From IMG/VR virus record IMGVR_UViG_3300042402_002641, positions 124,001-188,000 of that record: a stretch of 64,000 nucleotides of DNA, one strand, 5' to 3'. The translations under genes and the position numbers were made by a program. This document shows, one piece after another, positions 25,253 through 46,000 of the stretch (within the stretch, counting starts at the first letter, position 1; the number at the start of each line of letters is the position of its first letter). A model generated the notes under the pieces. The model was given only the letters and a program-made list of their open reading frames with translations. It searched no databases and was not told the origin of the DNA.

Positions 25253-25262
25253 TTGTGTGTCC

Positions 25263-25826
25263 TTATATATTAAACGAAAATGCCTTGCGTGGCTCATCGT
25301 TTGATTTTTGAAATACTTCGTGCTCTACCCAGTTGTCCCACATTAGCAATAACCCTGTTCTAGGAGGAATAATAACTTGGCTCTGTAATTGGTTAGTGTC
25401 AAATTTTGTGAAGGGCCTTGGATCGTGTATGACCAAAGGCGGAACGTCCTGCCCTGCATCTAAATAAAATGTTCCGCTAAACGTACATTCTTGATGTGCA
25501 TGTTTTCTTAAAAATGCATGCTTGTGCATTGAACTAAAAAATCCATAGGGTTTAAACATTGACTTTTCATACTCAACACCCTTGGTTTCTATTAGAGGCT
25601 TTGCATAATTTTCTAACAGATAGTCAAAAAACTCTAATACTTCTAATTCCGAATTCACTAATACATTAAACTTTTCGTTGGCCAAGGTCGATGGATAGTT
25701 TTCTGTACCTAGTAATCCGCTGTCTGTTAAGCTGGTATACTTGTTACAAAGAGGCAACAACTTTTCTGCAAACTCTACGTTAACATCTGATAATACTCGT
25801 GTAGGAAAAAAATTGTTTATCTTCAT
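25263..25826 (-). CDS. 2OG-Fe(II) oxygenase (TIGR02466-like)
   Basis: KHAH...FSGTFYL...DPRP...GLLLMWDNWVEHEV...RKAFSFN; ATGA overlap gives the start at 25826. Confidence 0.85.
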   Translation of the reverse strand: MKINNFFPTRVLSDVNVEFAEKLLPLCNKYTSLTDSGLLGTENYPSTLANEKFNVLVNSELEVLEFFDYLLENYAKPLIETKGVEYEKSMFKPYGFFSSMHKHAFLRKHAHQECTFSGTFYLDAGQDVPPLVIHDPRPFTKFDTNQLQSQVIIPPRTGLLLMWDNWVEHEVFQKSNDEPRKAFSFNI

Positions 25827-29102: not shown

Positions 29103-29657
29103 ATGATCTCACACATACAGATTTATGAAAATGCAGTACCTGCAACGTTTTGTGAACATTTAATAGGTTTATTTGATAAAAATGCAAAAGACATCATACA
29201 TGCACCTGCTTGGATGGATCATATCGGTATGTATGCCACTCCAGCAAAATATCCAGGGCAGGCAATGTCGTATGATTGGAAAAATGAAGTCAAAATTTTA
29301 GATGGTATTCTAGCTCCGATTATTGAAGATTATCGGAATAGAGTAGATGTTCTAAGTATGCTTCCAAAGAAATGTGGCCAGGAAGCGTATAGAATTAAAC
29401 GTTACAGAAAAAACGAACAAGAATTCAGGCTTCACGTCGATTGTTCTACCTATACCAACAGCAGTAGATTTTTGGCTGTTTTAATTTATCTTAATGATTC
29501 GGAAGCGGGCACTGAATTTCCCTTACAGGACATATCTATAACTGCCAAGCAGGGCAGCATCGTGGTTTTTCCTCCTTGTTGGCCATGGCCGCATCGAGGA
29601 TTGCGCCCCTCAATCGCAGATAAGTTTATTGTAAGCACCTATTACACCTACATCTAA
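29103..29657 (+). CDS. 2OG-Fe(II) oxygenase, prolyl-4-hydroxylase-like
   Basis: LHVD...RFLAVLIYLND...GTEF...KQGSIVVFP..W.WPHRG. Confidence 0.88.
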   Translation: MISHIQIYENAVPATFCEHLIGLFDKNAKDIIHAPAWMDHIGMYATPAKYPGQAMSYDWKNEVKILDGILAPIIEDYRNRVDVLSMLPKKCGQEAYRIKRYRKNEQEFRLHVDCSTYTNSSRFLAVLIYLNDSEAGTEFPLQDISITAKQGSIVVFPPCWPWPHRGLRPSIADKFIVSTYYTYI

Positions 29658-29660
29658 TAT

Positions 29661-30284
29661 ATGAAACGAATACTTAATTTATTTTCAGTTCCGATATTAG
29701 AAACAATTATAACAGATGTTGACAATCTCAACAAGGATTTGATAAGTTCAATTGACGCACTGTTTGCGTTAGATGATTCAAAAAGAATTTTGAGTCACAT
29801 GTGGAAAAATAATTTACAAACCAATGTAAAAAGCGAACTAGGCTACAGTTCATTCAATCAACATGACATCCTACAGCGTACAGAGTTTGACAGTTTATTT
29901 AATTTACTTACTCCTACAATAAATGGTTTTTTCACACAATTAAATTTTCCTGGCACTTGGCAGTGGGAAAATGCTTGGTGCAATGTTTATCCGCTTGATG
30001 CTTACGTGCCGTTACACGATCATAGAGGTGTTCATTGGAGCGGAGTATACTACGTGCAGGCTGAAACCGCGTGTGGAGATCTTTTATTGGTAGATCCTAA
30101 AGAATATGCATTGGCGAATGAACCTGATAATACCTTATATCGTGGTAATAAGATAACCAATTTTGTTCCGCAGCCTGGAAAATTGATTATGTTTCCCGGA
30201 TATTTAAAACATGAGTCAGAACCTAATCAATCCGATAAGGATCGAATTATAATTAGTTTCAATATAAATTGCCATGCAGACTAA
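29661..30284 (+). CDS. 2OG-Fe(II) oxygenase (TIGR02466-like)
   Basis: AWCN...LHDH...WSGVYYV...DP...PGKLIMFPGYLKHES...RIIISFN. Confidence 0.88.
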   Translation: MKRILNLFSVPILETIITDVDNLNKDLISSIDALFALDDSKRILSHMWKNNLQTNVKSELGYSSFNQHDILQRTEFDSLFNLLTPTINGFFTQLNFPGTWQWENAWCNVYPLDAYVPLHDHRGVHWSGVYYVQAETACGDLLLVDPKEYALANEPDNTLYRGNKITNFVPQPGKLIMFPGYLKHESEPNQSDKDRIIISFNINCHAD

Positions 30285-30858
30285 CGACATACACTTCTTT
30301 ACTGACAATCCGTATCTCCTTGTCACTAAAATAAATATCGTAGAAACACAAAGAAGACGGATGATCGATTGTGTACTATCTCAAAAAGATATAGCCAAGT
30401 ATCACGGAGGTTACACTTTTGAAATTATGGATCCGTATAATGACTTTGCAGAATTGTATAATATCTTCGTAGAATTAGCAAGACAGGTCTTTGAGAATTT
30501 TAGATTTAGTGTAAAACAAAAGAATTGGTGTTGGGCAAATGTATATAACTCCAGTAACAACAAGACTAATATGCATAACCATGTCAATACTTCAACTATC
30601 AATGGTGTGTTTTATCTGCATGTTCCAACTTTACCCGACGGCGAAGGTGGTCTTCAAATTACTAACAACGGTGTTGTTGATACATTTTATCCCGAAACTG
30701 GTGACTTATTGATTATGCCGTCGTGGATGCTGCATCAACCATGTGATCATAGTTCGGAAGAATATCGTATTTCAATTAACATGGAAATTAACACAATAGA
30801 ATCTGTAGATAATTTATATCTGTTAGATAAAATTCATAAAAACTGTACTCATGCATGA
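30274..30858 (+). CDS. 2OG-Fe(II) oxygenase
   Basis: WAN...MHNH...INGVFYL...GDLLIMPSWMLHQP...RISIN. Confidence 0.82.
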   Translation: MQTNDIHFFTDNPYLLVTKINIVETQRRRMIDCVLSQKDIAKYHGGYTFEIMDPYNDFAELYNIFVELARQVFENFRFSVKQKNWCWANVYNSSNNKTNMHNHVNTSTINGVFYLHVPTLPDGEGGLQITNNGVVDTFYPETGDLLIMPSWMLHQPCDHSSEEYRISINMEINTIESVDNLYLLDKIHKNCTHA

Positions 30859-31342
30859 TTCCTACAGTGTAATTTCAAAATCCTTTTTGACCTCGGATCA
30901 GTGTGACGAAATTATTGCTAACCATGATTGCAATTTAGAGCATGTAGAACAATCAATAAACCGCAAAGTTAATATTAAAGAAATTGATTTGTGTAGTGTT
31001 CCCAATCTAGTTGAGTTACTCAATGATGCCAACAATAAAATATTTCGCATGGACACCAATGGAGAAACTGAATGTTATTTTGCTCGGTATGATCCTGGCA
31101 ATCACTATGATAAATTGCACATTGATAGTCTGTCTGCAGAAATTACAAGAAAAATTTCCTTTAGTATCTTTCTAAATGATGATTTTGAAGGCGGTAATTT
31201 TGAAATGCTAGGTGAAAGTCTTGATATAAGAAAAGGAAAACTTTGTGTTTTCCCTTCCTTTTTACCTCACAGGGTAACCGCAGTTACTGCCGGCACCAGG
31301 TACGTTATTTTTGGATTCTTGTTAGGCCCCAGACTGAAATAA
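30851..31342 (+). CDS. 2OG-Fe(II) oxygenase (PKHD/P4H-like)
   Basis: LHID...RKISFSIFLNDDFEGGNFE...FPSFLPHRVTAVTAGTRY. Confidence 0.88.
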   Translation: MHDSYSVISKSFLTSDQCDEIIANHDCNLEHVEQSINRKVNIKEIDLCSVPNLVELLNDANNKIFRMDTNGETECYFARYDPGNHYDKLHIDSLSAEITRKISFSIFLNDDFEGGNFEMLGESLDIRKGKLCVFPSFLPHRVTAVTAGTRYVIFGFLLGPRLK

Positions 31343-31822
31343 CGGTGTAAAGAATGCTGTTCTAACTATCGCTTCCTCTCCCTCGAGTGTTTTAGTACTA
31401 CTACCACCAGGTCCTGTTGCTTTTAGACTCACATCAAGGGCTAGATCAGTTTGCCCTTTCTCGAGATTCAACACCACTTCTTCAGTAGTGTGTTTAACAC
31501 CATCAACAGTCCATTCGACACTCGTTACTGTTCCGGATATTCTCGATGTCAAAGTAATTTGATCGTGAGTTCTTGTTTGCTTGTGATCAATGTCTATATT
31601 TACAGAAGGTGGCCCTTCTGTTGGAATTGGATTCTCAGCCGCATGCTCTGTAGCCCATTGTCCTCCAGAGATCCATGTACCGTTTTTTAGTTTCCATCCT
31701 ACATGCACTCCTTCGTTGGGAATATCCATCCATTCAGCCAAAAGATCTGGATGGAACCTAGTTGCAGGATCATCATCACATATTTCAACTATTTCATTGT
31801 TTACAACTCTTGCCCATGTCAT
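31322..31822 (-). CDS. Hypothetical protein with possible C-terminal PKD/Ig-like domain
   Basis: SVEWTVDG...V.L.ATGPGGS.TKT is PKD-like; follows the Cys-rich pair. Confidence 0.6.
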   Translation of the reverse strand: MTWARVVNNEIVEICDDDPATRFHPDLLAEWMDIPNEGVHVGWKLKNGTWISGGQWATEHAAENPIPTEGPPSVNIDIDHKQTRTHDQITLTSRISGTVTSVEWTVDGVKHTTEEVVLNLEKGQTDLALDVSLKATGPGGSSTKTLEGEEAIVRTAFFTPLFQSGA

Positions 31823-31837
31823 AATATTTTCCTTTTA

Positions 31838-33496
31838 TTAAGCGTCTTTCCAGTATAAAATTGCCATCCCAGTCCCAGCTGGACTAGCTAGATAATCCAG
31901 TATGCATGGTGGAAATGCCAGTGCTGGGTTAGCTGTTGATCCGTTACAGCAGTCAAATGCTCCGCCATAGCAGATGCACAAAATATAGCTTCTATTTATT
32001 CCCGATCCGCCACCTTTACCAGCTTTTGACGATAGATGGCAAACTCCAACACCGCCTGCACCCCCTAGTGTTCCTGCACAGCTGATAATGAATGGAAATA
32101 ATGCATCCATCATTCTTTCTGCACAACAGACTTTGTTGGTGGTTCCTAGACAGCATACCAGTTCCCAATTTATGCTACCACATGCATTTGTTGCAGAACC
32201 CGCTACGCAACACTGCATGCCATAACTGCATAAATCGCAACAGTTAAACACAACACCACCAGTGCCTGCACCTTCGCCTGCGATTCTAGATGGTTTGTGG
32301 TTGTATGGATTAGCTGTAGCCCATCCACAAGAACCCCAATCATTGTTACCTACGTTAATATTTCTTCCTGCTGATCCACTACCAGCCATGTCGTGTATGT
32401 CGTGCCATGGATAGAATTTAGGGCTTAGTCCGGGTTCAGTAATACATGATCTAGGATGAATTGTTGATCCCCAAGGACTGTGATGTTGATAACCCCATAT
32501 CCAATAATCTTCTCGTCCTTCATTGTTCATCTTGCCGCCCCATCCTCCGGGGCCAGAACGATAACGTCCTGATTCGCAGCAGCCTTCGTAGTTCTGGCAG
32601 GTGCAGTATTCAATACACTGCCATTTAGAGCCGCCGCCGCCGCCGGCGTGTGCAGGATAAGATGATCTTGGAACCACAGATCCCGCATAATTACAGTTAC
32701 CCTTTACACATATACAGGCACAGATTGGATCTCTCACAGCGCAGCGGTTTATGTATCCGATTCCGCCACCACCTCCTGCTGAAGGTCCGTATCCTTGTCC
32801 GTAATTGTCCATGTTGTTGAAAGCGCATTGGCCAGCACCTCCAGTGGACCAAATCCATGATCCTGCACTGCCGCCGCCAGCATATCTAGCAACACAACAA
32901 ACACCAGAATCGTGTGCTGGGTCAAGCTGTCTTGCGCTAATTCCGCTCCATACCACACAATATCCGCAACAATTCTGTGCATAGGTGTAGATGCAGGCTC
33001 CGCAATAATGGCTGGCTCCGCCACCACAGTAATTTCTATTGTAACCGCCAGCACCGCCAGTGCTGTTCCAATCTCCGCCACTGGCACTACCGCCTGTACA
33101 GGCCGCTGCGCCGCCTCCTGTTACTAGAATGCCGCCTGGGGTATATGTTACTGCAGTATTTCCTTCTTGTCTTCCGACTGTGATTTGAACTGAATTGCCC
33201 GGAACCACGGTAAAATATTTTTCGGCATACCCACCTCCGCCACCTGCGGTGCCGCAACATTGAGGATTACAGGGTTTTGTTTTGCCGCCACCACCGACTG
33301 CGATGGCTCTCATACAGGTAACACCAGTCGGCACTGTAAATGTGTATGAGCCAGGTGTGTCAATTACTACTTTATTCTGCCAACATTCGTTGGCATCATA
33401 ACTGTATCTGTGAGTGCTTACATTATAACAAGTAGTCGCTACATTTGCTATGCAAGTACTTGGTTGTGATGCACCGGTGCTTATATAACGTCCCAT
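31838..33496 (-). CDS. Gly/Cys-rich putative fibre-tip adhesin, paralog A
   Basis: 552 aa, about 46 Cys by manual count, many GGxG motifs; DTPGSYTFTVP and AI.YW ends typical of glycine-rich tail domains. Confidence 0.7.
   Translation of the reverse strand: MGRYISTGASQPSTCIANVATTCYNVSTHRYSYDANECWQNKVVIDTPGSYTFTVPTGVTCMRAIAVGGGGKTKPCNPQCCGTAGGGGGYAEKYFTVVPGNSVQITVGRQEGNTAVTYTPGGILVTGGGAAACTGGSASGGDWNSTGGAGGYNRNYCGGGASHYCGACIYTYAQNCCGYCVVWSGISARQLDPAHDSGVCCVARYAGGGSAGSWIWSTGGAGQCAFNNMDNYGQGYGPSAGGGGGIGYINRCAVRDPICACICVKGNCNYAGSVVPRSSYPAHAGGGGGSKWQCIEYCTCQNYEGCCESGRYRSGPGGWGGKMNNEGREDYWIWGYQHHSPWGSTIHPRSCITEPGLSPKFYPWHDIHDMAGSGSAGRNINVGNNDWGSCGWATANPYNHKPSRIAGEGAGTGGVVFNCCDLCSYGMQCCVAGSATNACGSINWELVCCLGTTNKVCCAERMMDALFPFIISCAGTLGGAGGVGVCHLSSKAGKGGGSGINRSYILCICYGGAFDCCNGSTANPALAFPPCILDYLASPAGTGMAILYWKDA
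31895..31983. repeat. 89-bp perfect direct repeat, copy 1
   Basis: Base-by-base identical to 33556-33644. Confidence 0.97.
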
Positions 33497-33498
33497 GC

Positions 33499-35091
33499 TT
33501 AATAGTCCCTGTAATAAATTATTGCATAGCCTGAACCAGCATTACTGACCAAATTATCCAGTATGCATGGTGGAAATGCCAGTGCTGGGTTAGCTGTTGA
33601 TCCGTTACAGCAGTCAAATGCTCCGCCATAGCAGATGCACAAAAACTGACATTTAGCTTCGCCGCCACCACCACCGTAGCCTGCTTTTGAAGTCATGGAA
33701 CAAATTCCTACTCCTCCTGATCCGCCCAGTATTCCTGCGCATGTTATAAAGTTAGGAAACAAAGAATCTACCATTTTATAGGCCTGATCGGTCTGACCGC
33801 AAAGGCCAAGTTGACATATTTTCAGCCAATTTATTAGAGGGCCACCTGAATTATTGTTGGCTCCCATGCCCCATCCTTGCTGTTGTGCATCACAACAATA
33901 GTGCATGATGCCTCCAGTGCCCGACCCTTCTCCTGCATTCGCTGGACGAATACCCCATGATGTACCCATACAACTAAAACGCTGATGCCATTCAGCCACG
34001 TGGCCGGGTGATCCAGACCCTTTGATCTCTTGTATATCCCACCATGGTTCTCTAACTGGATCGCTGTATCCGCAGCGCACCTTCCATTGTGAGCAACAAC
34101 GAACTCCAAATGGCCAAGCGCAGTAGGCGCTCCAGCCCCATTCAAAGGTCCATCCTTCACTTTCATTTTGATCTGAACCGCCTGGACCTCCTGCGCCTCC
34201 AAGCCAAATACCGTTGATACATTGTCCTTGCCATGAACGGCAGCAGGCCGAAGGATTTATCTGTGTTCCGCCGCCGCCTTGGGCAGAACCTGGATGTGGC
34301 AAGCGAGGATGATCATGATCACTGTGCCCGTTGTTGTTGAATATGCAATTGCAGGTGCAACAATTGTAATGCCAATAAGTCGGCGCTTGGCCGCCGATAC
34401 CAGCGCCACCCGCAGCCACTCCAGAATGCAGATATCCGCAGACACAGCTGGCCGAACCACCACAAATATTCACTGGGCTTCCTGCACTGCCGCCACCGTT
34501 AACTATGGTATTACAGCAATCTGTGCCACCGTTTGAACTGTTCAAACATGTATAAACAACACAATATCCGCAACAGCTGGCAAAACAAAGATACTTGCAG
34601 CTGCCACACCAGTGGCTGACTGAGCCGGCGCATTGATTACAACCCCAGCCTCCGTATCCTCCCCTACTGTTCCAATCGCCTCCACTTCCGACTCCAGGAA
34701 TACACCCACTTGCTCCAGTAGCCGAATGAACTGCAACTGCGTTACAGGTTATGCTAGATGTTCCTTCTTGTCTACCAACGGTTATACCTATTGTAGCGCC
34801 AGGTGTCACGGTGAAGTATTTTTCACTTAGACCTCCGCCTGATCCTGCTGCAGAACAACAGGCGCCTATTGATATACATTTAGGTTTTCCGCCGCCGCCG
34901 ATCACTATTGTTCGAGCACAAACTATGCCTGAAGGAACGGTAAAGGTATATGTTCCTGGACGATCGTAGACCACCTTGTATGGCCAACACTGTTTTCCGT
35001 CATAGTATCCTTTTCCCCCTGTGACCTTAAAGGCAGAGGTTTTTTCTAAAACAGGATTTTCTGTTACTACTATTGGTACAAAACGTCCCAT
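33499..35091 (-). CDS. Gly/Cys-rich putative fibre-tip adhesin, paralog B
   Basis: 530 aa, about 45 Cys, collinear with paralog A. Confidence 0.7.
   Translation of the reverse strand: MGRFVPIVVTENPVLEKTSAFKVTGGKGYYDGKQCWPYKVVYDRPGTYTFTVPSGIVCARTIVIGGGGKPKCISIGACCSAAGSGGGLSEKYFTVTPGATIGITVGRQEGTSSITCNAVAVHSATGASGCIPGVGSGGDWNSRGGYGGWGCNQCAGSVSHWCGSCKYLCFASCCGYCVVYTCLNSSNGGTDCCNTIVNGGGSAGSPVNICGGSASCVCGYLHSGVAAGGAGIGGQAPTYWHYNCCTCNCIFNNNGHSDHDHPRLPHPGSAQGGGGTQINPSACCRSWQGQCINGIWLGGAGGPGGSDQNESEGWTFEWGWSAYCAWPFGVRCCSQWKVRCGYSDPVREPWWDIQEIKGSGSPGHVAEWHQRFSCMGTSWGIRPANAGEGSGTGGIMHYCCDAQQQGWGMGANNNSGGPLINWLKICQLGLCGQTDQAYKMVDSLFPNFITCAGILGGSGGVGICSMTSKAGYGGGGGEAKCQFLCICYGGAFDCCNGSTANPALAFPPCILDNLVSNAGSGYAIIYYRDY
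33556..33644. repeat. 89-bp perfect direct repeat, copy 2
   Basis: Identical to 31895-31983; encodes (L)CICYGGAFDCCNGSTANPALAFPPCILD. Confidence 0.97.
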
Positions 35092-35103
35092 ATTATTATC
35101 CTA

Positions 35104-35427
35104 TCATGCTGTAGATGTTTCAATGCCATATGCTATGGCATTAACTGATGTTGCGCTGGAATAAACTACTAACAATTTGCCCGCTTGCATCACTATTCCT
35201 GTTCTTTCAAGCACAGAATTTGCTCCTAAAGAAACTCCGTATTCTAAATATTCTGCGTTTGTAGGCGTCGAAGCAGACGCCACTGCAAGTCTCACTGTTA
35301 CTGCCGTTGCACCTCGATTTACAATAGAGACTGTGACTACTGCGAATGTTGTTGCAGGAACAGTATAGATTGTAGTATTAGTAGTTGCGGCTAAGTCCGA
35401 GGGTGTTCCTAAGATACCTGTTGCCAT
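35104..35427 (-). CDS. Small beta-rich virion protein
   Basis: 107 aa, AGGAG SD; similar pattern to 48878-49210 and 52098-52499. Confidence 0.7.
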   Translation of the reverse strand: MATGILGTPSDLAATTNTTIYTVPATTFAVVTVSIVNRGATAVTVRLAVASASTPTNAEYLEYGVSLGANSVLERTGIVMQAGKLLVVYSSATSVNAIAYGIETSTA

Positions 35428-35448: not shown

Positions 35449-38400
35449 TTAGTTCAAAAAGTAATTGAATGCCAAAGGAAGGCCAGTTACGCCGCCTCTA
35501 AACTCAAAAGTCGCTAACATTTGGATAGCAGCACCTGTAGTCGTTGTAATCTGATTGCTATTAATTACAATAGAACCAGCAGTTACTTGGTTTACGTTTA
35601 GACTTGCGCCTCCGCCACCAATTTGACTGGCAATAAATGCTTTTATCGCTTTCTGTGTGGGCACTACATTGTCTGAATCAGCAGTAAAAAACGGATCGGT
35701 AGAGAATTCGTTAATTGTAGCTGAAGATCCGCCTAATGTAACATTTCCTAGATTAAGTTCCTGAAGTCCGGAAATATTAAATGCATCTGCATTCAATGTT
35801 GCAATACCTGTGCTCTGCTCAATGTTGAACAGGTCTCCTACTCGGAAATTGCCGTCTTGGTCAGTTGATGTAAAGAATACTCGTCCTCCATTACCGTCTA
35901 CAGTTTCGTTAGCGGGTATTGCTTCCTGTAATGGCGTGCCAGGATAGTTTGTTTCTACAAAATTTCCTGTGCCTATACTTAAAAAATCGTGTCCTGTAAG
36001 TCTGACCTGACTATAACGTAGTCTAGTGGACACTGTTACTGCATCTTGCGGTGCCTCTGATATTGTCAACACTGGGCTAATTTGCAGAAATGCTGTATGA
36101 GATCCTGGGTTTTGTCCTAAAAATGTGATCACATTTACCAATTTGAATGTTCTGTCTGGCAGATGCCCAAACACAACATTGGCGCCTGGAGTGGGTCTTG
36201 CTGTAAGCTGTCTTACTGCTACAAAACCGCCAGATTGAAATAAATTTGAATATCCATCTCCTGCAGTGACTTCTGCACCGCTGGTGACATATGTAGCACC
36301 TCTATCTACAAAACTTGGATTTGCTAGCACTCCTGATCCTAGTCTTACAGATACTGGTGCTTCAAAGGTGTTGTTAGGATCAGTAAATGTTATAGACGGT
36401 TCGGTGGTATAACCAGATCCAGGCTCTGTGATATTGATCTGGAATATCTTGTTTGATGCTACCAACGCACGAGCTCTAGCAGTGGCTCCGGTTCTAATGT
36501 ATGTGGCCACTTGACCTGTGCTAGCGCCAACACCTACAAATTGACCATAACGATCTCTGTTACCAAAAGTGATAGCTGAGAATCCGCTGGCCGCTGCACT
36601 GGTCGTTCTTGTGGTCCATGTTACGCCGTCTGGAGAAGTTGCTGCTGCTGTGGTTGTACTTACAGCAAGGAATACTCCTTGACCGTATGTGACCTTGGTC
36701 CATTGTGCTGTTGCTGGCAGTGTGCTGGCAGTCCAAGTAATACCATCTAGACTGTAAGCAGCTATAGTGCCGCTGGTGTTGGAAACAGCAACAAACCTAT
36801 TATTACCGTAGGCTATGCTGTTCCAGTTTGAGCTAGAAGGCAATGTGCTTGCAGTCCAGGTTCCTGTAACACCTGTTGTGGTCGCATAGTTTGTGACATT
36901 GGTTCCGCTTTTAATGGCTACAAATCTGTTTTTACCGTATGCAATAGCTGTGAAACCAGTGGTGGTCAGTGTACCTGTTTGATCCCAATTTTCGCCATCG
37001 TTGCTGATTCTCACTGTAGTGACATCGCTGCTGATTGCTACAAATTTCTGTGAGTTAAACCCTCCAAATACCACATCGACCCATGTAGCAGAAGTTCCCA
37101 TATTAGCTGCTGTCCATGTGATACCATCTTCGCTGTATGCGGCTGTGGTGTTAGCGGCAACACCAGCTACTGCTACAAATTTGCTGACTTTGCCTACTGT
37201 GGACCCATCGTCGAATAGGCCAGCGGTCATCGCTGACCAGTCAGCAGCACTAGGCATCAGACTAGGTCTTGTAGTCCAGCTAACTCCATCTTCGGAGGTC
37301 GCGCCCACTGTAGATCCTTGACGCAGAGCCACATATCTGCCGCCGATACCGTAACCGCTGTGATCAAAATCTATAATAGCACCAGTCGCAGCATTGACCG
37401 CTGTGATGGTTATCACTAGGTCGTTGGCTGTGCTTAATCCGCCTAAACTAGTACCTAGTATGGTTATGGTCTGTAATCTCACATAACCTGTGCCAGCTGT
37501 CTGTAAAGAAGGTGTGTATTTCCATCCGTTGCGTATCACGGTAAAGTTTGCCCCAACACCGGCACCGCTGTAGGTGCCTGTTAATGATGTGTATACCGCA
37601 GCAGTTTCACCGTATTTCACTGCACTCCAGGTGCCTGAAGTTGGTAGTGTAGCTGCTGTGGATGTATAACCAGGTGCTGAGAATGTTACTCTAGGTTCAA
37701 TGATATAGGTGGTCGAAGCATCTGGAGCTACAATGGCTGTGCCTGCAACAAGATGATCAAAACCTGTTGTACCATCAGATTCTTTTATTAATCCTGCTAT
37801 CTTGGTACCTGAATTGTATGTGTTGATGATACCAAACTGTCCAACACCTGCACCACCGGTTAACACTAGTTTCATGCCTATATAAGCAGTGCTAGATTCC
37901 CCGTCTGTGGCAGCAATAGTCACTGAATTTGATGTTCCGCCCTGCGCAGTATTGGAATTAGTAATATATCCGAATCCGCCAAAATTGCCCACAGATTCTG
38001 GAGCATTCGTGCTATCGTCAACAAGATCTAACAAACGAGCTTCAAACACAGCATCATCACGGAATTCATCTGCTTGTACAGAACCTCCTGTACCGCCACC
38101 TGTTATCACATAAGATACTTCGGTGTAGTCAATACCAGCATTTAGAAATTCAAACTGAGTCAATGCAGATCCGTCAGTAACAATGTTATCGATCACAGCC
38201 TTAAATTTAAGACGATTATCAACTACTCCGGTATCTGGAGTTTCTGTAGGGTCAACTCCTTCTGCTACAGCCCCAAAATCTCCGTATGAGCAGTTGCCGT
38301 TGGTTCCACGAATTCTACCACCGTTTTCCGCTAGGTAGCCCACGTGAGCATAATATGTAAACACAGAAACTAGCTCAGCACGGCCGTTGTTAGTGATCCA

Positions 38401-41400
38401 AGCACCGATACCGTCGCTTAGAACCTGCGTAAAGTCGTTGGAAACTATAGAATCGTTGCCTCCGTTATGCAATGCGCCGTCGATCTTTTGGCCAACGCAA
38501 GCTGTACCTAATGTGGTTACGCCTTGTACGTATGGTGAACGGGTGTTAATCCAGGTGCGATAATCCTCTGGACCCCAACCTGGATCCAGTGATGCATACG
38601 CACCTGCAGAAACTCTTGAAGTTCCGAATTCATTAGGTGCAAGTAGATCACCTGTGAGTCCTTGCAGAGTTTGATCTCTTAGACCTGTGCCGTCTCTGAG
38701 ATAATACATGTCTTCTTCTAGACTTCCTGTTACACTGTTAGCATAGTACCTAGCAGCGTATCTTGATTTGTAATTGCCTGGATATTTCAAATCATACTTT
38801 AGTGCATCAATATAGGTGCCAACATCTCGTAGGCACGATGCACTATTGTAATACAATGCTACTGTCATAGATCCTGAGGCATCGGATGCGATGTCTAGTG
38901 CTGTGTTTGAATCTCTTGTTGTAGCGATTTTAAAGGTTGTTGAGCTTACAACGTTCTGTATGTAATATGTTGTACCTGCACTAATACCGCCAAACGTTGT
39001 TCCTGTAAATCTCACTGCTGCATTACGCTGCATCCAAGCAGTGCTGGTGCAGGTAAACACGTCTGTGGCCGCGGTGGCATTTGTTACTGTAGTTGTATAC
39101 GTTGAGTCTATGTAGGCATCGATCTCTGCAACTATGTAGTCTCTGTTTCTTTCTAATTGCAGAACTGCGTAATCGACCATCCTGTTGCCAGAGGCACAAC
39201 GACTACCTTCATTAGTAGCGCCATAAATGATATCATCTAACAGAGTCATTAGGGTTTCAATGCGAGCCTGTGCAGTGGTATCTCCGCCTACATTGGCCTT
39301 GGCTAGACCTTTGACGTAAGTGAATGCTGCTCTAGTGGCTGCTTTCTGTCCTAGACTATACACGTCTGATGAGCTGGCTCTTAGATAGGCCAATGCAGCG
39401 TTTCTAGTTTGTCCGTTGGCGTTAAACATAAAATCGTAGCCCACTGCATCTAATATGATCTTAGCATCGCGTTCACATTTTGCAGAATTGTAGACTAATG
39501 TGGGGAAGTTAGCAGCAATATACGCAGTCATCGCTGATACAATAGTACTGACCTGTGCATTTAATGTGGTAAACGCAGTGATCAATGCGGTGGTAGAACT
39601 TACACCGTTGGTGGCAATCGGACGATCCTCATAGGTCATTACCAAGGTTAAACCGGAACCGTTAGTAAATCCTGTTGCCGCTGAACCTGCATATGATGTT
39701 GACACTTTGAAATCTGTACCAGTTAACCCTGAAGCGATCACATAATAGCGTGTGCCTGCAGTTAGACCATTCTGTGTTTCAATAGGAACCACTAGATCTC
39801 CTGCTTGTAGGCTGTGACCAGCGGTGACAAAAGTATCTGTACCAGTGATTGAAGTCACTGTGACTATAGGAGGAGTAGCTGCTGTAGAGTCACCTGCCAA
39901 CAGATTAGTGATATTGTCAATGTTAGCGCCGATGAATGAGCTGGCTGCGGAACCTCCTGTGAGATTAGTTGCGTCAGTGAATTGTGTAGCAGCATTACCT
40001 GCGGATTTGGTCACTGTGGTGTTGGCAGCGATCTGCTGCATCACAGTTTTTAATCTGCCATAAGATGCCACAGTAGCGGCAACTTCTGATGCATCTATTT
40101 CTAATCCTGTAGTGCCATCAAAATAGGCTAATCCTGCATTGAGGGTCTGTGTAAAACCACCATAGGTCAAGTCATAGATCATTGCATCAACTATAAAGCC
40201 TGTGTCTCGTTTGCATATGGTTCTAGAATATTGCACTGAAGGATAGTTTGCCGTGATATAAGCAATAATTTCAGCCTTGATAAATTCTTTGTTTTCTTTT
40301 ATTAGTGTTCTAGCGGCACCGTAGCCTGTGAGATAAGCACCGTTGTATCCTGTAGGGTCTGTATTTGATACCATGTGTGTGGTACTGATACGATAATCGA
40401 TCTGATGCTGTATTACTCTTACCAGTTGTGTAATATCTGCCTGTTCATCTGCGCTGGCATACGGAAATGCTACACTCTGTGTAGCGGTGTTTCCTGAACT
40501 TTCCGTCACGTTCTGGCCAAAAATAATTTGGCTGACCACTGTTTCCATTCTTGACAGCGCACCAACAGAATAGTATGAATCTGCCAGATTGGTCAAGCTG
40601 CCTGCAGGACCAGCATTTGTTGATCGAAGTTCAGCTCCTATAACACAGGTCTGCTCCGGAACAATGATCGGCAGTGTTTCTCTATACTGGCCAGTAGCTA
40701 TGCGGATAAGATTGTTAGGGCTTACGCGAGCTGGAACACTGGCTAATGCTGCTGCAATCTGTGGGGCAGTAACCGCTGCTGCGCGAGCAGTGATAGCATT
40801 AGTTATCACTTCAACTAATTCAGCCGCTGTGGTGTAAGATCCTGATTCAGCATGGAGGTCGGCATTGAAATACTGCGCTACGGTAGCTGTTGAATTGTCA
40901 CCGTTTAGAGTTTGATAGTTTACTGCTGGTGCTGACTGTGCCAGAACATTCTCAACTAAAGTGACCATATAGTTATAGGCAGCTATAGATTCGTCTGATT
41001 CTGCAGCAAGTCCTGGATAAGCTTCGGTTTCTTCTGCGCTGAGTCCGCCTATGAGAGCATTGGCTGCACCTCTAGTTTTAACGTTACCACCATGTCTCAA
41101 ATCATAGATCAGTGCATCAACAACAAATCCTACATCTCTTTCACATTTGAAATCATCGTAGACGAACGCTGATGTAAACGGTGCGATGTTGTTGGTGATT
41201 TGATTTTGTATGAACTCAGTGGTTTCACGCTGTATAAACACGCGATTTAGTTCTAGTAGATATGTGGCATCGGGATTTCTTGGACCTCGTTCTACCTGTT
41301 CGCAGGCATATCGAATAGTCTTCCAAGGCTTGTCCCATGTTTTTCCGTATGTTGGTCCAGGAAGGTCGGTTCCGTCTGTACTAACAAAATATTCATGATC

Positions 41401-42984
41401 GATTTGATTAAGAGAAGCCCACTCGGGTATCGTCCCAGTAGATCTTAATATTTGTCCTTCATAGCCGATAGGCAGTCTTGTAGGACCACTAGGACTGTAG
41501 TATACTAAATCACCTACTGTGGTTAAAACAGAAACTTCCGATCCAACACTTAATAAACTCCAATAGATTCCTGTAGTATCTTGGTCAGGTCTAGAATTTG
41601 GCTGACCGCCGCCGGCTGATCCTACTGTAGATCCGTCATCACCTTCTGACCTATGTGCCAGCAAACAGATATATGTGTTAGATTCAAATCTAACAGCATC
41701 ACCTTGTAGATAATCTACATCATCAGTCCAGGTGCCTTGCCAGCTAATACCAGAATTCAATCTAGTCCAGTATGAGGCATTTGGTGGTTCTGCTGAAACT
41801 GTAGCGGTCATTGAACCAGTAGCATCGCCTGTGATATCAAATGTTGAGCCACCAGATGTAGTTGAAATTGTTATGTTACCTGCGGCCACAGTCTTAACAA
41901 AATATCTAGCAGTGGTAAACACGTTGCCAAATGTTGTGCCGGTGAATCTCACTGTCATACCTACTGCGATACCTGTTGTAGAAGCTATAGTGAAGGTGTC
42001 TGTGCTAGCGGTGACTGCTGTAACTGTGACTACTGTAGATGGTGAGTTAGCTGTGGCAAGATAGGTATATCCTCCTAGTCTGACCACTTCACCGATCTTG
42101 TATGATGTTGCGTTCGTCCAGTCTGATTGAAATTTCAGTCCTTCAGTGAACAGATCCCAATTAGAAGCGGTAATTGCAGGGTTAGCCGCGGCAGATGCGG
42201 CAGTGTGTACAGTTTTAGCTATGTATTGATTACCACCGTAGCCAACTATATCTCCTGGTTGATACAGTGTAGCTGAACTCCATGTGCTTTCATATGCTAC
42301 ACCTTCGACAAATTGTGCCCAGCGACCTGCAGTACTGTCTGTTAAGAATGCACCGGCCGCGGTATGTTGTATGATACAGATCCAAAGTCCTGCACCTTCT
42401 TTTACGACGTCATTGATTTTGTATCTGGTTCCAGCAACCCAAGTAGTTTTGTATTCTACTCCTTGGTTAAAACTATCCCATTTAGCTTGATCTGCCTCCA
42501 GTCCCGATGCAGTTGTGGATGCAGATGTATGATGAGTATTACACACATAGGTGTAGCCACCATATCTAACTAGATCATTTACCTTGTAACGAGTAGATAC
42601 GTTCCAGTCGGTTTTCCAATCAAATCCTTCTGCATACACAGTCCATTTAGCTTGATCAGCTTCAAGGCCCGATGCAGTAGTAGCAGCGGATGTGTGACTG
42701 TCGTTACAGATATATAACAATCCGCCATATTTGACCACATCGTTGAGTTTGTAGAATGTACCAACAGTCCAATCTCCGGTCCATGCCTGACCGTCGCTCA
42801 TTTGGTTCCATTTGGTAGGACTATATTCAAGGTCTGTGTTGAAATCTGCAGCAGAGGTATGTCCTACCGCGCAGATATAGGTGCGCCCACCATATCTTAT
42901 TACATCATCTATGTAATAAACTGTGGCGGCACTCCAGTTGCCTTTCCATACAAATCTAATTCTACCTAGTTTAAATTCTGCCAT
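35449..42984 (-). CDS. Giant tail-fibre/virion protein, 2511 aa
   Basis: 7 N-terminal CBM5/12-like repeats, CxRD helical repeats, beta-helix-like region, W..IAYG..RFVA propeller-like repeats, conserved RLTGHDFL/STDQDGNFR C-terminus. Confidence 0.85.
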   Translation of the reverse strand: MAEFKLGRIRFVWKGNWSAATVYYIDDVIRYGGRTYICAVGHTSAADFNTDLEYSPTKWNQMSDGQAWTGDWTVGTFYKLNDVVKYGGLLYICNDSHTSAATTASGLEADQAKWTVYAEGFDWKTDWNVSTRYKVNDLVRYGGYTYVCNTHHTSASTTASGLEADQAKWDSFNQGVEYKTTWVAGTRYKINDVVKEGAGLWICIIQHTAAGAFLTDSTAGRWAQFVEGVAYESTWSSATLYQPGDIVGYGGNQYIAKTVHTAASAAANPAITASNWDLFTEGLKFQSDWTNATSYKIGEVVRLGGYTYLATANSPSTVVTVTAVTASTDTFTIASTTGIAVGMTVRFTGTTFGNVFTTARYFVKTVAAGNITISTTSGGSTFDITGDATGSMTATVSAEPPNASYWTRLNSGISWQGTWTDDVDYLQGDAVRFESNTYICLLAHRSEGDDGSTVGSAGGGQPNSRPDQDTTGIYWSLLSVGSEVSVLTTVGDLVYYSPSGPTRLPIGYEGQILRSTGTIPEWASLNQIDHEYFVSTDGTDLPGPTYGKTWDKPWKTIRYACEQVERGPRNPDATYLLELNRVFIQRETTEFIQNQITNNIAPFTSAFVYDDFKCERDVGFVVDALIYDLRHGGNVKTRGAANALIGGLSAEETEAYPGLAAESDESIAAYNYMVTLVENVLAQSAPAVNYQTLNGDNSTATVAQYFNADLHAESGSYTTAAELVEVITNAITARAAAVTAPQIAAALASVPARVSPNNLIRIATGQYRETLPIIVPEQTCVIGAELRSTNAGPAGSLTNLADSYYSVGALSRMETVVSQIIFGQNVTESSGNTATQSVAFPYASADEQADITQLVRVIQHQIDYRISTTHMVSNTDPTGYNGAYLTGYGAARTLIKENKEFIKAEIIAYITANYPSVQYSRTICKRDTGFIVDAMIYDLTYGGFTQTLNAGLAYFDGTTGLEIDASEVAATVASYGRLKTVMQQIAANTTVTKSAGNAATQFTDATNLTGGSAASSFIGANIDNITNLLAGDSTAATPPIVTVTSITGTDTFVTAGHSLQAGDLVVPIETQNGLTAGTRYYVIASGLTGTDFKVSTSYAGSAATGFTNGSGLTLVMTYEDRPIATNGVSSTTALITAFTTLNAQVSTIVSAMTAYIAANFPTLVYNSAKCERDAKIILDAVGYDFMFNANGQTRNAALAYLRASSSDVYSLGQKAATRAAFTYVKGLAKANVGGDTTAQARIETLMTLLDDIIYGATNEGSRCASGNRMVDYAVLQLERNRDYIVAEIDAYIDSTYTTTVTNATAATDVFTCTSTAWMQRNAAVRFTGTTFGGISAGTTYYIQNVVSSTTFKIATTRDSNTALDIASDASGSMTVALYYNSASCLRDVGTYIDALKYDLKYPGNYKSRYAARYYANSVTGSLEEDMYYLRDGTGLRDQTLQGLTGDLLAPNEFGTSRVSAGAYASLDPGWGPEDYRTWINTRSPYVQGVTTLGTACVGQKIDGALHNGGNDSIVSNDFTQVLSDGIGAWITNNGRAELVSVFTYYAHVGYLAENGGRIRGTNGNCSYGDFGAVAEGVDPTETPDTGVVDNRLKFKAVIDNIVTDGSALTQFEFLNAGIDYTEVSYVITGGGTGGSVQADEFRDDAVFEARLLDLVDDSTNAPESVGNFGGFGYITNSNTAQGGTSNSVTIAATDGESSTAYIGMKLVLTGGAGVGQFGIINTYNSGTKIAGLIKESDGTTGFDHLVAGTAIVAPDASTTYIIEPRVTFSAPGYTSTAATLPTSGTWSAVKYGETAAVYTSLTGTYSGAGVGANFTVIRNGWKYTPSLQTAGTGYVRLQTITILGTSLGGLSTANDLVITITAVNAATGAIIDFDHSGYGIGGRYVALRQGSTVGATSEDGVSWTTRPSLMPSAADWSAMTAGLFDDGSTVGKVSKFVAVAGVAANTTAAYSEDGITWTAANMGTSATWVDVVFGGFNSQKFVAISSDVTTVRISNDGENWDQTGTLTTTGFTAIAYGKNRFVAIKSGTNVTNYATTTGVTGTWTASTLPSSSNWNSIAYGNNRFVAVSNTSGTIAAYSLDGITWTASTLPATAQWTKVTYGQGVFLAVSTTTAAATSPDGVTWTTRTTSAAASGFSAITFGNRDRYGQFVGVGASTGQVATYIRTGATARARALVASNKIFQINITEPGSGYTTEPSITFTDPNNTFEAPVSVRLGSGVLANPSFVDRGATYVTSGAEVTAGDGYSNLFQSGGFVAVRQLTARPTPGANVVFGHLPDRTFKLVNVITFLGQNPGSHTAFLQISPVLTISEAPQDAVTVSTRLRYSQVRLTGHDFLSIGTGNFVETNYPGTPLQEAIPANETVDGNGGRVFFTSTDQDGNFRVGDLFNIEQSTGIATLNADAFNISGLQELNLGNVTLGGSSATINEFSTDPFFTADSDNVVPTQKAIKAFIASQIGGGGASLNVNQVTAGSIVINSNQITTTTGAAIQMLATFEFRGGVTGLPLAFNYFLN

Positions 42985-43002: not shown

Positions 43003-46000
43003 TTATCTGAATGATCTATGAAACATCGATTGTGCTAACATTGTTCCTCTAATTCCTACTGTGGGTCCAACAAAGTCTGTACGTACTGGGAATATATTGC
43101 TTTGATTCGCAGTGGTGTCGATAAGATTTGGACCTACTAGTATAGTTCCTGCTATAAAACTTGTAACAGCTATTTCGCTACCGCCAACAGATAGTCTATA
43201 GGCCAGATAGGATTTGATTGCTTTCTGGGTCGGTACTACGTTATTTGAATCTTCTGTAAACAATGGATCAGTAGAAAATTCACGTACGACTGCTCCAGAT
43301 CCGCCTACACGTATTCCCCCAAGACGTAATTCACTTAATCCATTTAGATCAAAAAAGTCCGCAGAAATAGTAACAACACCTGTGGCCTGTTCTACAGCGA
43401 ATAATTCGCCTGCACGGAAGTTACCGCTTTGATCGGTAGATGTATAAAATACTCTACCACGATTTGCTTCCACTACTTCGTTTTCTGGTGCAGGAGTATA
43501 GAATCCACTGTATAATTCTGGGTAATTGGTTTCTTCGAAATTTCCTGTACCTATGTCTAAGAAATCGTGTCCAGTAACACGACACTGACTTATGTCTGTT
43601 CTAATAACTATTGATGTGTCGTGTTGTACAAAATCACGTGATTTAAATTCTGGACTGATTCTAATTTGTGCAGACAATCCTAAAGGTGTATCGTCAAGAG
43701 GTGTAATAGCAACCAACGTGTAAAAATCTGGAAGATTACCTATTGTTAGACTAGATCCAGGGCCCGGATACTGTGTTAGGCCGTTCAAAACACAGAATTT
43801 TCCTACCGGTATTACATCGGCATAGCCGTCTCCGGTGATTGTCACAGTTGTGCTGGTAGTTCTATATCCCAGTCCTCTGTTAATCCAACTTGGTTGTGCT
43901 AGAACTCCGTCGCCGGTTCTACATTCTACAGCAGGATCAGAAGAATTATTGGGATCTATGATTGTTAGAGTTGGTGATTCAATATATCCAGAACCAGGAT
44001 CCCATATTTTTACAGTACGGATTATGCCGCTACTCAGTGTCAGACGCCCTAATGCTGTGGCACCGGTTTGTATTTTATTGATATAATTAGAGTTATCAAC
44101 AGTGATCCACATTGGTGTTTTCTTGCCTACCGTTGAATCTCGCGAATCAATGTACGGATTACCAAATGCCAAGTTCTGCCATAGTTTACTGTTGGCCAAT
44201 TGCCTTGAAGTCCAAACTACTCCGTCATAACTGGTAGCGGCAAAATTAGTCTCAAAGGCACTGGCATCGTTTCCTATGTTTCGGCCACCGGTGTCACCTA
44301 TGGCAAAAAATACTCCTTGTCCATATTTGATTTTTTTCCAATAGTGTGCGGTTGATCCATCTTGTGTGGGCATCGTAGCAGGTAACCAATCAACGCCATC
44401 AAAGCTGTATGCAACTTCGCCTGTACTTGATAATGCCACAAATCTATTATTACCGTAACTGATACTGGTCCAATCTTTAGCAGACGAATCACCAATCACA
44501 TCCATGATATGTCCAGCCCACGACCATGTATTTGCTATAGAATTATAGGTTCCTACTGCAACAGTATTGCCGCTGTTTGCTAATACAACAAACGTGTTTT
44601 TACCATACGCAATATCGATCCATTCGTTGAGGGTGGAGTCGCCAAATGTAGGCAGTGCCACTGTGGTCCAACTTGTGCCGTTCAAACTATAAGCGGCAGA
44701 GTTAGAATTTGTGGCTATAGCAAGAAATACACCGCCACCGTAGATGGCACTATTCCAAGATCTAGATGCCGGCATGGATCTAGTGGTCCATGTAAATCCA
44801 TCCGGGGAGCTGGCTGCCACCGCACTGCCTGTGCGTATGGCCACAAATATATGATTACCCAATGCGGGATATGTAACTCTGCCTGCTGCAAGACATTGCC
44901 AATTTCCCGAGCTCGGCATGTTAAACCCAACCCAAGTTGTTCCGTCGTCACTATACATAGCGACATTGGTGCCGGAAGCCACAGCTATGAATTTGCCGCC
45001 TGCTCCAAAACTTTCATTTCCTGTATTTACAATCTGTTCTGCTACTGATAACACAGAGTTTGTGCTGTCATCGCTTACGTCAAGTACTTTCATTACTATG
45101 TCGTTGCCTGGAGTATCGCCACCGAGTAAATTTCCAGGAATAGTTAATAGTTGATTAACAGCATATCCTGCTCCTCCGTCATTCAGCGTGATGGTGTAGG
45201 TTCTACCATTTTTCACCACATTGAATGAGGCGTAGGCCGGAGTAACTTCAATCACAGTACCAGTTCCTGCTGTGGTGGTAGCTATATCTGTAAACGATTC
45301 AGTTGTTTCACCATAAATTATGTTGGTCCAAGATGCACTCTCTGGGCCAATAATCTGCGTGGCCGAATAAGGCGGTGCTGAAAACACCGGTCTTGGTTCT
45401 ATTCTATATACCGTATTAGTTAATAAGGGTACTGTTGCCGGTTTTCCTGATACCACATGATCCCAACCGATTGTGCCATCTGATTCTTTATAAATCGTAG
45501 CGATCTTAGTAATATTATCGTAGGCTCCTATATATCCGTATTGACCCGTTCCAGCACCGCTGGTTATGATAATTCTCATACCATTATACTGTGTAAATGT
45601 GTTTTGATCGTTTGAAGCCAATGTGATAGTGGTGGCATCTCCTCCTTGCGCATTGTTTCCTGTGGTAACAAAACCTCCCCCGCCTATTGATTGCGGTCCA
45701 GTGGTATTTTTATCTATAATTCTAGCTTCAAAAACAGCATCGTCTCTGAAATCTTCAAATATCACACTTGCATTAACACCGGCACCCTGAACACTGCCTT
45801 GTGCAGTGGTATAGTTTTCACCACAGTGAGAAAATTCAATATTCTGTATTTCGTCTACGAAATCTCCGGCAAATGCTGCAGCGACCGTTGCTTGTCCGCT
45901 GCGATTATCTATCACAGCAGTTCGCGGTATTTCGTCGACATTAACACCATCTGAAATCACGCCATACGATCCGTATGAACTGTTTCCGTTAGTGGCACGT

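What the first reader, a model, noticed from the sequence alone, without database searches (positions are those of the whole stretch)
31895..33644. Perfect 89-bp repeat shared by otherwise diverged adhesin paralogs
Seen: 31895-31983 and 33556-33644 are identical, synonymous sites included. Other conserved peptides of the two genes (YTFTVP, EKYFTV, TVGRQEG, SGGDWNS) differ at synonymous positions. Both copies are in the same frame near the C-termini, 1661 bp apart. Inference: recent gene conversion or a recombination anchor. Crossover would delete one gene-equivalent and give an in-frame chimera, or amplify the array, providing a route for adhesin swapping or copy-number change.
Basis: partly seen in the sequence, partly recalled or inferred. 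Interest (0 to 1): 0.68.

Follow-up and report, generated by a model that had tools for sequence, protein, structure and literature searches.

The report
Gene-conversion tract in phage fibre paralogs
Two old, neighbouring tail-fibre-type genes of a large lake-water phage share one perfectly identical 89-base patch because one copy recently overwrote the other there; the same patch was homogenised independently in distant relatives, which is an ordinary mechanism acting at a recurring spot.

Summary
Window 31895-31983 and 33556-33644 are identical over exactly 89 nt, in the same codon phase. They lie near the 3' ends of two minus-strand tandem genes: A (31838-33496, 552 aa) and B (33499-35091, 530 aa).

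Outside the tract the genes are 41% identical in protein and about 53% in DNA, with saturated dS (about 2.2). Inside it, dS is 0 over 29 codons. No codon shuffle out of 20,000 gave a run longer than 42.

The window is part of a 280-kb IMG/VR phage record from lake water. A and B sit at the end of the tail-fibre module. Their fold resembles the cyanophage Pam3 fibre (TNF-like plus glycine-rich domain; Z 11.1).

The B-A pair is present in all 29 related contigs, and A and B are reciprocally monophyletic. In the closest relatives (about 90% DNA identity) the A and B tracts differ from each other and from the window, so the identity is a lineage-specific gene conversion.

A distant relative (L020) has an independent 74-nt identical tract at the same place. 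The 13-15-aa core encoded by the tract is identical between A and B in 4 of 20 genomes, against 4 of 380 cross-genome pairs.

Independent sequencing runs show the repeat is not an assembly artefact. I found no evidence for deletion, amplification or chimeric genes. This is a known mechanism in an uncharacterised protein family.

The parts
31895..31983 (-). 89-nt identical tract, copy in paralog A (codons about 505-534: LCICYGGAFDCCNGSTANPALAFPPCILD)
   Evidence: Exact identity to 33556-33644 with no extension on either side. dS is 0.
33556..33644 (-). 89-nt identical tract, copy in paralog B (codons about 483-512). Probably the recipient over most of its length.
   Evidence: In the comparison with ortholog L004 this is the most diverged 60-nt window of gene B (68% against a mean of 90%), whereas no 60-nt window over the A tract falls below the 78% cut-off of the same scan; over the tract itself A is 85% identical to its L007 ortholog and B 79%. 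The 5' half carries A-type diagnostic bases.
31922..31945 (-). Variable loop inside the tract (NGSTANPA) in A. The same loop in B is at 33583-33606.
   Evidence: This is the only part of the tract that varies much between genomes. It sits between near-invariant blocks coding C[IV]C[YWH]GG and LAFPPCxLD.
31838..33496 (-). Paralog A, 552 aa. Gly- and Cys-rich protein with a TNF-like plus glycine-rich fold.
   Evidence: ORF and translation. AlphaFold model with pLDDT 85.7 and pTM 0.88. Pam3 fibre match Z 11.1, rmsd 2.6 over 160 residues. More than 100 homologue clusters.
33499..35091 (-). Paralog B, 530 aa. Lies upstream of A in the same operon, with a 2-nt gap.
   Evidence: 41% identity to A. 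B forms a clade separate from A with 100% support.
35104..35427 (-). 107-aa small fibre-like protein upstream of B
   Evidence: phrog_11338 'tail fiber protein', E 1.8e-10. Syntenic in L003 and L004.
35449..42984 (-). 2511-aa giant fibre protein with five CBM_5_12 modules
   Evidence: Pfam PF02839, E 1.5e-29. Strongly mosaic against L004.
43003..48489 (-). 1828-aa tail fibre protein
   Evidence: phrog_9851 'tail fiber protein', E 7.8e-154.
31322..31822 (-). Conserved 166-aa gene immediately downstream of A. It has an N-terminal small domain and a PKD/Ig-like beta-sandwich. Its role is unknown.
   Evidence: Present after A in every full locus except the L021/L049 lineage, where A is truncated. 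Model pLDDT 87. PKD/FN3-like matches with Z 8-10 over residues 70-157 only.

Best explanation
The 89-bp repeat is the footprint of a recent, short, non-reciprocal homologous recombination (gene conversion) between two anciently duplicated tandem genes of a freshwater jumbo phage. [quoted passage not shown] The tract covers one short variable loop. Its ends lie in two codon blocks (LCICYGG and LAFPPCILD) that are nearly invariant in both paralogs. I infer that these blocks supply the homology where exchange starts and resolves. The 5' half of the tract is A-type and the B copy changed most, so transfer was mainly from A to B. The loop itself is new relative to the closest relatives, so it arose or was imported first and was then copied. 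The same segment has been homogenised independently in other lineages, and loop variants are shared between paralogs and between phages. The segment therefore behaves as an exchangeable cassette, as in the motif-bounded shuffling known from T-even gp38 adhesins. Shown: identity, boundaries, lineage specificity, recurrence, and that the repeat is real. Inferred: the recombination mechanism, the direction of transfer, and any role of the loop in binding.
For: The tract is exactly 89 nt, while the flanks are 53-68% identical. dS is 0 in the tract and 2.2-3.0 outside it. No codon shuffle out of 20,000 reached it. In relatives L003 and L004 (ortholog dS 0.31-0.38) the A and B tracts differ from each other, indels included, and both differ from the window. 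In L007 the A and B copies already share an exact 22-nt block that starts at the same base as the window's tract (posA 1514 / posB 1448), which shows the tract edge lies in pre-existing homology. On the pre-tract sequence A and B are reciprocally monophyletic with congruent subtrees in 29 genomes, indicating one old duplication. There is an independent event in L020: that genome is only 43% identical to A in protein and belongs to another clade, yet it has a 74-nt exact run at the same place, which is absent in its sisters L019 and L043. Within-genome A/B similarity of the tract core is 0.68 against 0.57 between genomes (permutation p 3.5e-4), while the 30 aa just upstream show no such effect (p 0.77). 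Perfect core matches occur in 4 of 20 genomes against 4 of 380 cross-genome pairs (Fisher p 2.8e-4), in four different clades. The repeat is not an artefact. In runs X1 and X18 it forms its own 89-nt unitig at about twice the flanking depth, and contigs reach 30 nt into it from both sides of both copies. A strain in X18 that is 1-2% diverged carries the identical 89-mer. An independent IMG/VR assembly (L005/L061) has the same B copy.
Against: The donor is not cleanly resolved. Of the diagnostic sites, the 5' ones are A-type but two 3' sites are B-type, and the loop matches neither relative. The history may therefore involve more than one event or an outside source. No donor with this loop sequence was found in IMG/VR. 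Only two lineages have nucleotide-level identity. In the other lineages the signal is weak: codon identity in the loop core is 56% against 45% in the two tract flanks (46% in the rest of the gene), p 0.026. The relatedness of some genomes inflates the permutation tests.
Confidence: 0.85

Rival explanations
1. Selection, not just recombination opportunity, keeps the loops of A and B matched. Both proteins would use this C-terminal segment on the same partner (a shared receptor, a shared docking site on the fibre, or each other), so conversions covering the loop are favoured and retained.
For: Loop matching within genomes is far above cross-genome expectation and is confined to this segment. In L059 and L018 the tract is identical or nearly identical in protein between A and B while synonymous sites have diverged (73-76% DNA identity). 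In L059 the match includes a rare Cys-to-Ser change shared by both copies. In L018 and L044 DNA identity peaks at the loop itself rather than in the conserved flanks.
Against: Roughly half of the genomes have unmatched loops, so matching is not required. The commonest loop variant (NGSGPA) is frequent in both paralogs, which raises chance matches. The C-terminal region is the most similar part of the two genes, so neutral conversion is expected there anyway. No structural or binding data place the loop at an interface.
Confidence: 0.25
2. The repeat is a working recombination anchor. Crossovers between the copies regularly delete the 1661-bp unit, giving a B-body/A-tail chimera, or amplify it, giving copy-number or adhesin switching in the population.
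For: The geometry allows it: direct repeats in the same codon phase, giving a predicted in-frame 530-aa chimera.
Against: All 29 full related loci, and the partial ones, carry exactly one B followed by one A. A and B clades are clean with 100% support. In run X1 the unitig between the repeats has the same depth as the outer flanks (12.8 against 12 and 12.6), so a deleted form is not abundant there (depth per contig is a weak measure). An 89-bp repeat is short for frequent crossover.
Confidence: 0.05
3. The identity reflects a functional nucleotide element (an RNA structure or protein-binding site) conserved in both genes, or a diversity-generating retroelement template/variable-region pair.
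For: Perfect identity extends to synonymous sites, and the position near the C-terminus of a candidate receptor-binding protein resembles the placement of retroelement targets.
Against: Relatives with 90% DNA identity have different sequences here, including indels. The RNA fold z-score is -0.33. The 280-kb record has no reverse transcriptase (the record is about 79% complete). The copies are identical rather than differing at adenines, and both are coding.
Confidence: 0.02
4. Assembly artefact: a chimeric or collapsed metagenome assembly created the identical stretch.
For: The window comes from a metagenome-assembled viral contig.
Against: Contigs from four runs cover both copies and both flanks. 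The 89-mer is a separate node at about double depth in two of the runs. A separate IMG/VR contig has the same B copy. The repeat is shorter than typical reads. An analogous tract occurs in an unrelated 356-kb contig.
Confidence: 0.02

Closest known systems
Motif-bounded recombination in T-even phage gp38 adhesins. Hypervariable segments lie between conserved glycine-rich motifs (Trojet et al. 2011, PMC3157838, citing Tetart et al. 1996 and 1998).
   Same: [quoted passage not shown] Here the tract ends in the LCICYGG and LAFPPCILD codon blocks. Variants are shared across phages like a common pool.
   Different: The exchange here is between two paralogs inside one genome, not only between co-infecting phages. 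The proteins are not gp38 homologues by sequence. The exchanged segment lies between the last two beta-strands near the C-terminus, not in the glycine lattice. A role of the loop in host range is untested.
Cyanophage Pam3 tail fibre gp24, with TNF-like plus glycine-rich domains (PDB 7YPX; PMC9608196). Related folds occur in the Bxb1 tail tip and in the ALK/LTK ligand-binding domain.
   Same: This is the best structural match of paralog A: Z 11.1, rmsd 2.6 A, 160 residues, 28% identity, spanning model residues 36-552, and Foldseek E 8e-4. Some homologues reach Pfam PF21722 Gly_rich_2. The genes sit in a fibre module.
   Different: A and B are twice as long, with a large Cys-rich insertion (about 46 Cys) and no long N-terminal helix. 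P0001 and P0002 themselves do not reach the Pfam threshold. The downstream gene does not resemble the Pam3 chaperone gp25 in the part that could be matched.
Concerted evolution of tandem paralogs by short-tract gene conversion (general phenomenon; from established knowledge)
   Same: There is a sharp island of zero divergence in otherwise saturated paralogs. It is lineage-specific and recurs at the region of highest similarity.
   Different: Nothing essential differs. The particular points here are the phage setting and the repeated targeting of one loop.

Membership tests
Interparalog gene-conversion tract | Abrupt island of near-zero divergence, synonymous sites included, within diverged paralogs | tested here: met
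   89 of 89 nt identical, dS 0 against 2.2-3.0 outside, and 0 of 20,000 shuffles reached it.
Interparalog gene-conversion tract | The duplication predates the tract, and sister lineages lack it (phylogenetic incongruence) | tested here: met
   The A and B clades have 100% support in 29 genomes. The A and B tracts of L003 and L004 differ from each other.
Interparalog gene-conversion tract | Both copies exist in the real DNA and are not an assembly product | tested here: met
   Independent runs and assemblies show them. Only k-mer contigs were available, no long reads.
Interparalog gene-conversion tract | Identifiable donor and recipient | tested here: inconclusive
   The 5' half is A-type and the B copy is more altered. 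However, two 3' sites are B-type and the loop matches neither relative.
TNF-like + glycine-rich fibre proteins (Pam3 gp24-like; Pfam PF21722 Gly_rich_2) | Sequence match to PF21722 above the curated cut-off | tested here: not met
   P0001 and P0002 give no hit even at E 10. Homologue P0028 scores 25.4 against a cut-off of 24.3, and P0069 scores 21.4, below it.
TNF-like + glycine-rich fibre proteins (Pam3 gp24-like; Pfam PF21722 Gly_rich_2) | Fold: beta-sandwich whose strands extend into a glycine-rich lattice | tested here: met
   The confident model matches 7ypx_A at Z 11.1, 9d93_Qa at Z 9.7 and ALK at Z 8.7. BFVD hits are named glycine-rich domain proteins.
TNF-like + glycine-rich fibre proteins (Pam3 gp24-like; Pfam PF21722 Gly_rich_2) | Virion fibre component that binds the host receptor | not testable with these tools
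   Only the context supports this: the portal, major head protein and giant fibre genes lie upstream in the same orientation.
T-even gp38-type adhesin cassette exchange | Homology to gp38 | tested here: not met
   No PHROG or Pfam gp38 match. There is only a weak structural hit to a cyanophage protein named Gp38.
T-even gp38-type adhesin cassette exchange | Variable segments flanked by conserved motifs, with exchange end points in the motifs | tested here: met
Diversity-generating retroelement | Reverse transcriptase nearby, and template and variable repeats differing at adenines | tested here: not met
   No RVT_1 in the 280-kb record. The copies are identical, and orthologous differences include indels.
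Site-specific tail-fibre switch (Gin/Cin/shufflon type) | Inverted repeats plus a recombinase | tested here: not met
   The repeats are direct, and the window has no inverted 25-mer. No recombinase was seen among the neighbours scanned.

The most novel reading that the evidence does not exclude
The two paralogs are functionally coupled through this C-terminal loop. The phage would need A and B to present the same loop, because they bind one receptor, dock on one site of the giant fibre, or co-assemble. Recurrent conversion would then be the means by which a new loop variant is installed in both genes at once. This would be a built-in way of keeping a two-component receptor-binding device in step while it changes specificity.
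Probability: 0.2. Interest if true: 0.55.

Novelty: new member of a known kind. Interest (0 to 1): 0.35.

Why it matters
The tract is a clean, dated natural example of short-tract gene conversion inside a phage genome. It occurs in an uncharacterised but widespread family of Gly/Cys-rich fibre-type proteins of freshwater jumbo phages, with more than 100 protein clusters and always as a tandem pair. The recurrence at one loop marks that loop as a candidate specificity or interface element, and it gives a concrete target for mutagenesis or structural work. It does not reveal a new mechanism. Recombination between conserved motifs of fibre and adhesin genes is well known.

Tried and rejected
- **Reference phages:** no DNA or protein match in INPHARED, so no annotated relative is available.
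- **Sequence families:** A and B have no Pfam family, and a profile search against PDB sequences found nothing.
- **Retroelement:** rejected. There is no reverse transcriptase, the copies are identical, and orthologous differences include indels.
- **RNA element:** rejected. The fold z-score is -0.33.
- **Outside donor:** a 35-nt exact pattern from the loop, searched against IMG/VR, found only the near-identical contig L005/L061.
- **Reads:** every run offered was held as Logan contigs. Any crossover product would reuse the same 31-mers, so deletion or duplication could not be tested. Two 'skip' joints near 31879-32037 have short sides (42 nt) and probably come from other related phages.
- **Downstream gene as chaperone:** I tested whether the conserved 166-aa gene is a Pam3-gp25/Tfa-like chaperone. 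Only a generic PKD/Ig-like sandwich was matched, so the idea is not supported and not excluded.
- **Crossover chimeras:** I screened homologues for a B body with an A tail using N- and C-terminal motifs. The apparent discordances were misclassifications by my N-terminal motif rule, and no clear chimera was found.
- **Loop variability:** the loop is not the most variable part of the protein. Several internal segments vary more, so 'hypervariable' would overstate it.
- **Complex prediction:** not run. A plus B exceeds the size limit, the relevant domain is built from both ends of the chain, and the report does not claim binding.
- **The search of protein representatives:** the large representative-protein search was not needed.
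Full report
**Observation**

Window 31895-31983 and 33556-33644 are identical over exactly 89 nt, and identity stops at both ends. This is the only long non-tandem exact repeat in the window, and the 280-kb record holds just these two copies.

The genes are on the minus strand. Paralog A is 31838-33496 (552 aa, P0001). Paralog B is 33499-35091 (530 aa, P0002), upstream of A with a 2-nt gap. The tract lies in codon phase 1 in both genes, 57 nt (18 codons plus the stop codon) before each gene's 3' end, with a spacing of 1661 bp.

**More than chance**

- A and B are 41% identical in protein and 53% in DNA.
- Where the residue is the same, only about 45% of codons are identical, against 29 of 29 in the tract.
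- NG86 dS is 2.19 outside the tract, about 3.0 in the C-terminal flanks and 0 inside.
- Shuffling codon columns 20,000 times never gave a run above 31. Confined to the conserved last 120 codons, the maximum was 42.

**Context**

The window is G000:C1:124001-188000 of an IMG/VR virus record of 280 kb, estimated 79% complete. Runs that hold it are lake-water metagenomes.

Upstream in the same orientation lie:
- the portal gene (59104-60810)
- the major head protein gene (54392-55561)
- an 1828-aa tail fibre protein gene (43003-48489)
- a 2511-aa protein gene with five CBM_5_12 modules (35449-42984)
- a 107-aa fibre-like protein gene (35104-35427)

A and B close this module. A conserved 166-aa gene follows, and then four convergent 2OG-Fe(II) oxygenase genes.

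**What the proteins are**

A and B have no Pfam family of their own. They belong to a family of more than 100 protein clusters of about 530-560 aa, all from metagenomes and unnamed. A few of these reach PF21722 Gly_rich_2.

An AlphaFold model of A built on 93 homologues is confident (pLDDT 85.7, pTM 0.88). Its best structural matches are:
- the cyanophage Pam3 fibre: VIA Z 11.1, rmsd 2.6 A, 160 residues, 28% identity, model range 36-552
- the mycobacteriophage Bxb1 tail tip: Z 9.7
- the ALK/LTK TNF-like plus glycine-rich domain: Z 7-9

BFVD matches are mostly 'glycine-rich domain-containing' phage proteins. In Pam3 this module is the receptor-recognising end of the fibre (PMC9608196).

A and B are about twice as long as the Pam3 protein and carry about 46 Cys and 100 Gly each. 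'Adhesin' is therefore a fair working label that rests on fold and position, not on a test.

In the model the tract comprises a strand (504-508), a short helix, the loop, and a helix (530-537), just before the final strand (544-549). All of these are at high confidence.

**Comparative evidence**

Scans of IMG/VR and of JGI metagenomes gave 29 distinct loci with both genes complete. Every locus with room has B followed by A.

On the sequence before the tract, A and B are reciprocally monophyletic (100% support) with matching subtrees. The duplication is therefore old and both copies are kept (this is the quick tree, because the careful search did not finish).

The closest relatives, L003 and L004, have about 90% DNA identity and ortholog dS of 0.31-0.38. 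Their A and B tracts differ from each other, including a 3-nt indel in the loop, and both differ from the window. L005, essentially the same phage from another sample, has the window's B tract. The identity is thus specific to the window's lineage.

**Boundaries and direction**

The tract starts at the same base as a 22-nt block that is already identical between A and B in L007. It ends at the end of the conserved LAFPPCILD codons. Part of the 89 nt was therefore identical before the event, and the newly copied part may be as short as about 45 nt.

Against L004, the tract is the most diverged 60-nt window of gene B (68% against a 90% mean). No 60-nt window over the A tract falls below the 78% cut-off of that scan; over the tract itself A is 85% identical to its L007 ortholog and B 79%. 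The 5' diagnostic bases are A-type. Transfer from A to B is therefore the likelier direction.

Two 3' sites are B-type, and the loop (NGSTANPA) matches neither relative. A similar loop type occurs in L026 A, L039 B and P0073. No exact outside donor was found.

**Recurrence**

L020 comes from a 356-kb contig in a different clade and is 43% identical to A in protein. It has a 74-nt exact A/B run at the same position (0 of 20,000 shuffles), and its sisters L019 and L043 lack it.

Across 20 dereplicated genomes:
- The tract core (13-15 aa) of A resembles the B of the same genome more than the B of other genomes: 0.68 against 0.57, permutation p 3.5e-4.
- The 30 residues just upstream show no such effect (p 0.77).
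- Perfect core matches occur in 4 of 20 genomes (window, L018, L020, L059; four clades) against 4 of 380 cross-genome pairs (p 2.8e-4).

In L018, L044 and L059 the proteins match but synonymous sites have partly or fully diverged. In L018 and L044 DNA identity peaks on the loop itself. Excluding the window and L020, codon identity in the core is 56% against 45% in the two tract flanks and 46% in the rest of the gene (p 0.026 against the flanks).

Loop variants form a limited set that occurs in both paralogs and in many phages. The loop is a small variable island in the most conserved part of the protein, not its most variable region.

**Reads**

Only Logan contigs were on offer.

In X1 and X18 the 89-mer is a separate unitig at about twice the flanking depth. 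Contigs from each flank run exactly 30 nt into it, which is the signature of a true two-copy repeat in a 31-mer graph. The X18 strain differs by 34 sites in A and 19 in B, yet has the identical 89-mer.

This rules out an assembly chimera. It cannot reveal crossover products, because those would reuse the same words.

**Mechanism and rivals**

The best-supported reading is short-tract gene conversion bounded by conserved motif codons, recurring in this family. It is analogous to exchange between conserved motifs in T-even gp38 adhesins (PMC3157838).

- Selection for matched loops is possible but unproven. About half of the genomes are unmatched.
- A standing deletion or amplification switch has no support.
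- A retroelement (no reverse transcriptase), an RNA element and an artefact are rejected.

**Verdict**

The mechanism is ordinary. The recurrence at one loop, in an uncharacterised fibre-protein pair that is always kept as a tandem, is the part worth following up.

Noticed in passing
window 29103-31342 (+) and 23657-25297 (-): Four consecutive 2OG-Fe(II) oxygenase genes (PF13640/PF13759) lie convergent with the fibre operon and are syntenic in L003 and L004. A tryptophan-halogenase-like gene lies nearby. They might modify the Gly/Cys/Pro-rich fibre proteins, but this is pure speculation.
   Followed up: partly
window 31322-31822 (-): A conserved gene follows paralog A in every full locus except the L021/L049 lineage (166-282 aa; N-terminus MxWAK(I/V)VN.E). 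The model shows a small N-terminal domain and a PKD/Ig-like sandwich. I could not confirm it as a fibre chaperone.
   Followed up: yes
L011/L012/L058, A nt 1198-1226 and B nt 1144-1172: A 29-nt exact A/B run lies at the PDNAGEGAG motif (codon-shuffle p about 5e-4). It is a possible second small conversion site in another lineage.
   Followed up: partly
L021 and L049, paralog A: Paralog A is truncated to 393 aa, with the remainder readable in another frame. This is a frameshift or an assembly error in one lineage.
   Followed up: no
window 57699-57740 and 63601-63695: In-frame 15-nt tandem repeats (2.8 and 6.1 copies) lie inside ORFs 57326-58171 and 60807-63803 of the head module. There are further 21-30-nt repeats at 60949-61059.
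   Followed up: partly
window 35449-42984 (-): The giant fibre gene is strongly mosaic against L004, with many 60-nt windows at 53-75% identity in a 90% background. This is typical module exchange.
   Followed up: partly
paralogs A and B, whole length: Each protein has about 46 cysteines, many of them invariant (CxC, CC, CCGYC). This suggests dense disulfide bonding or metal binding in a virion protein. No known fold was matched for the middle 250 residues.
   Followed up: no
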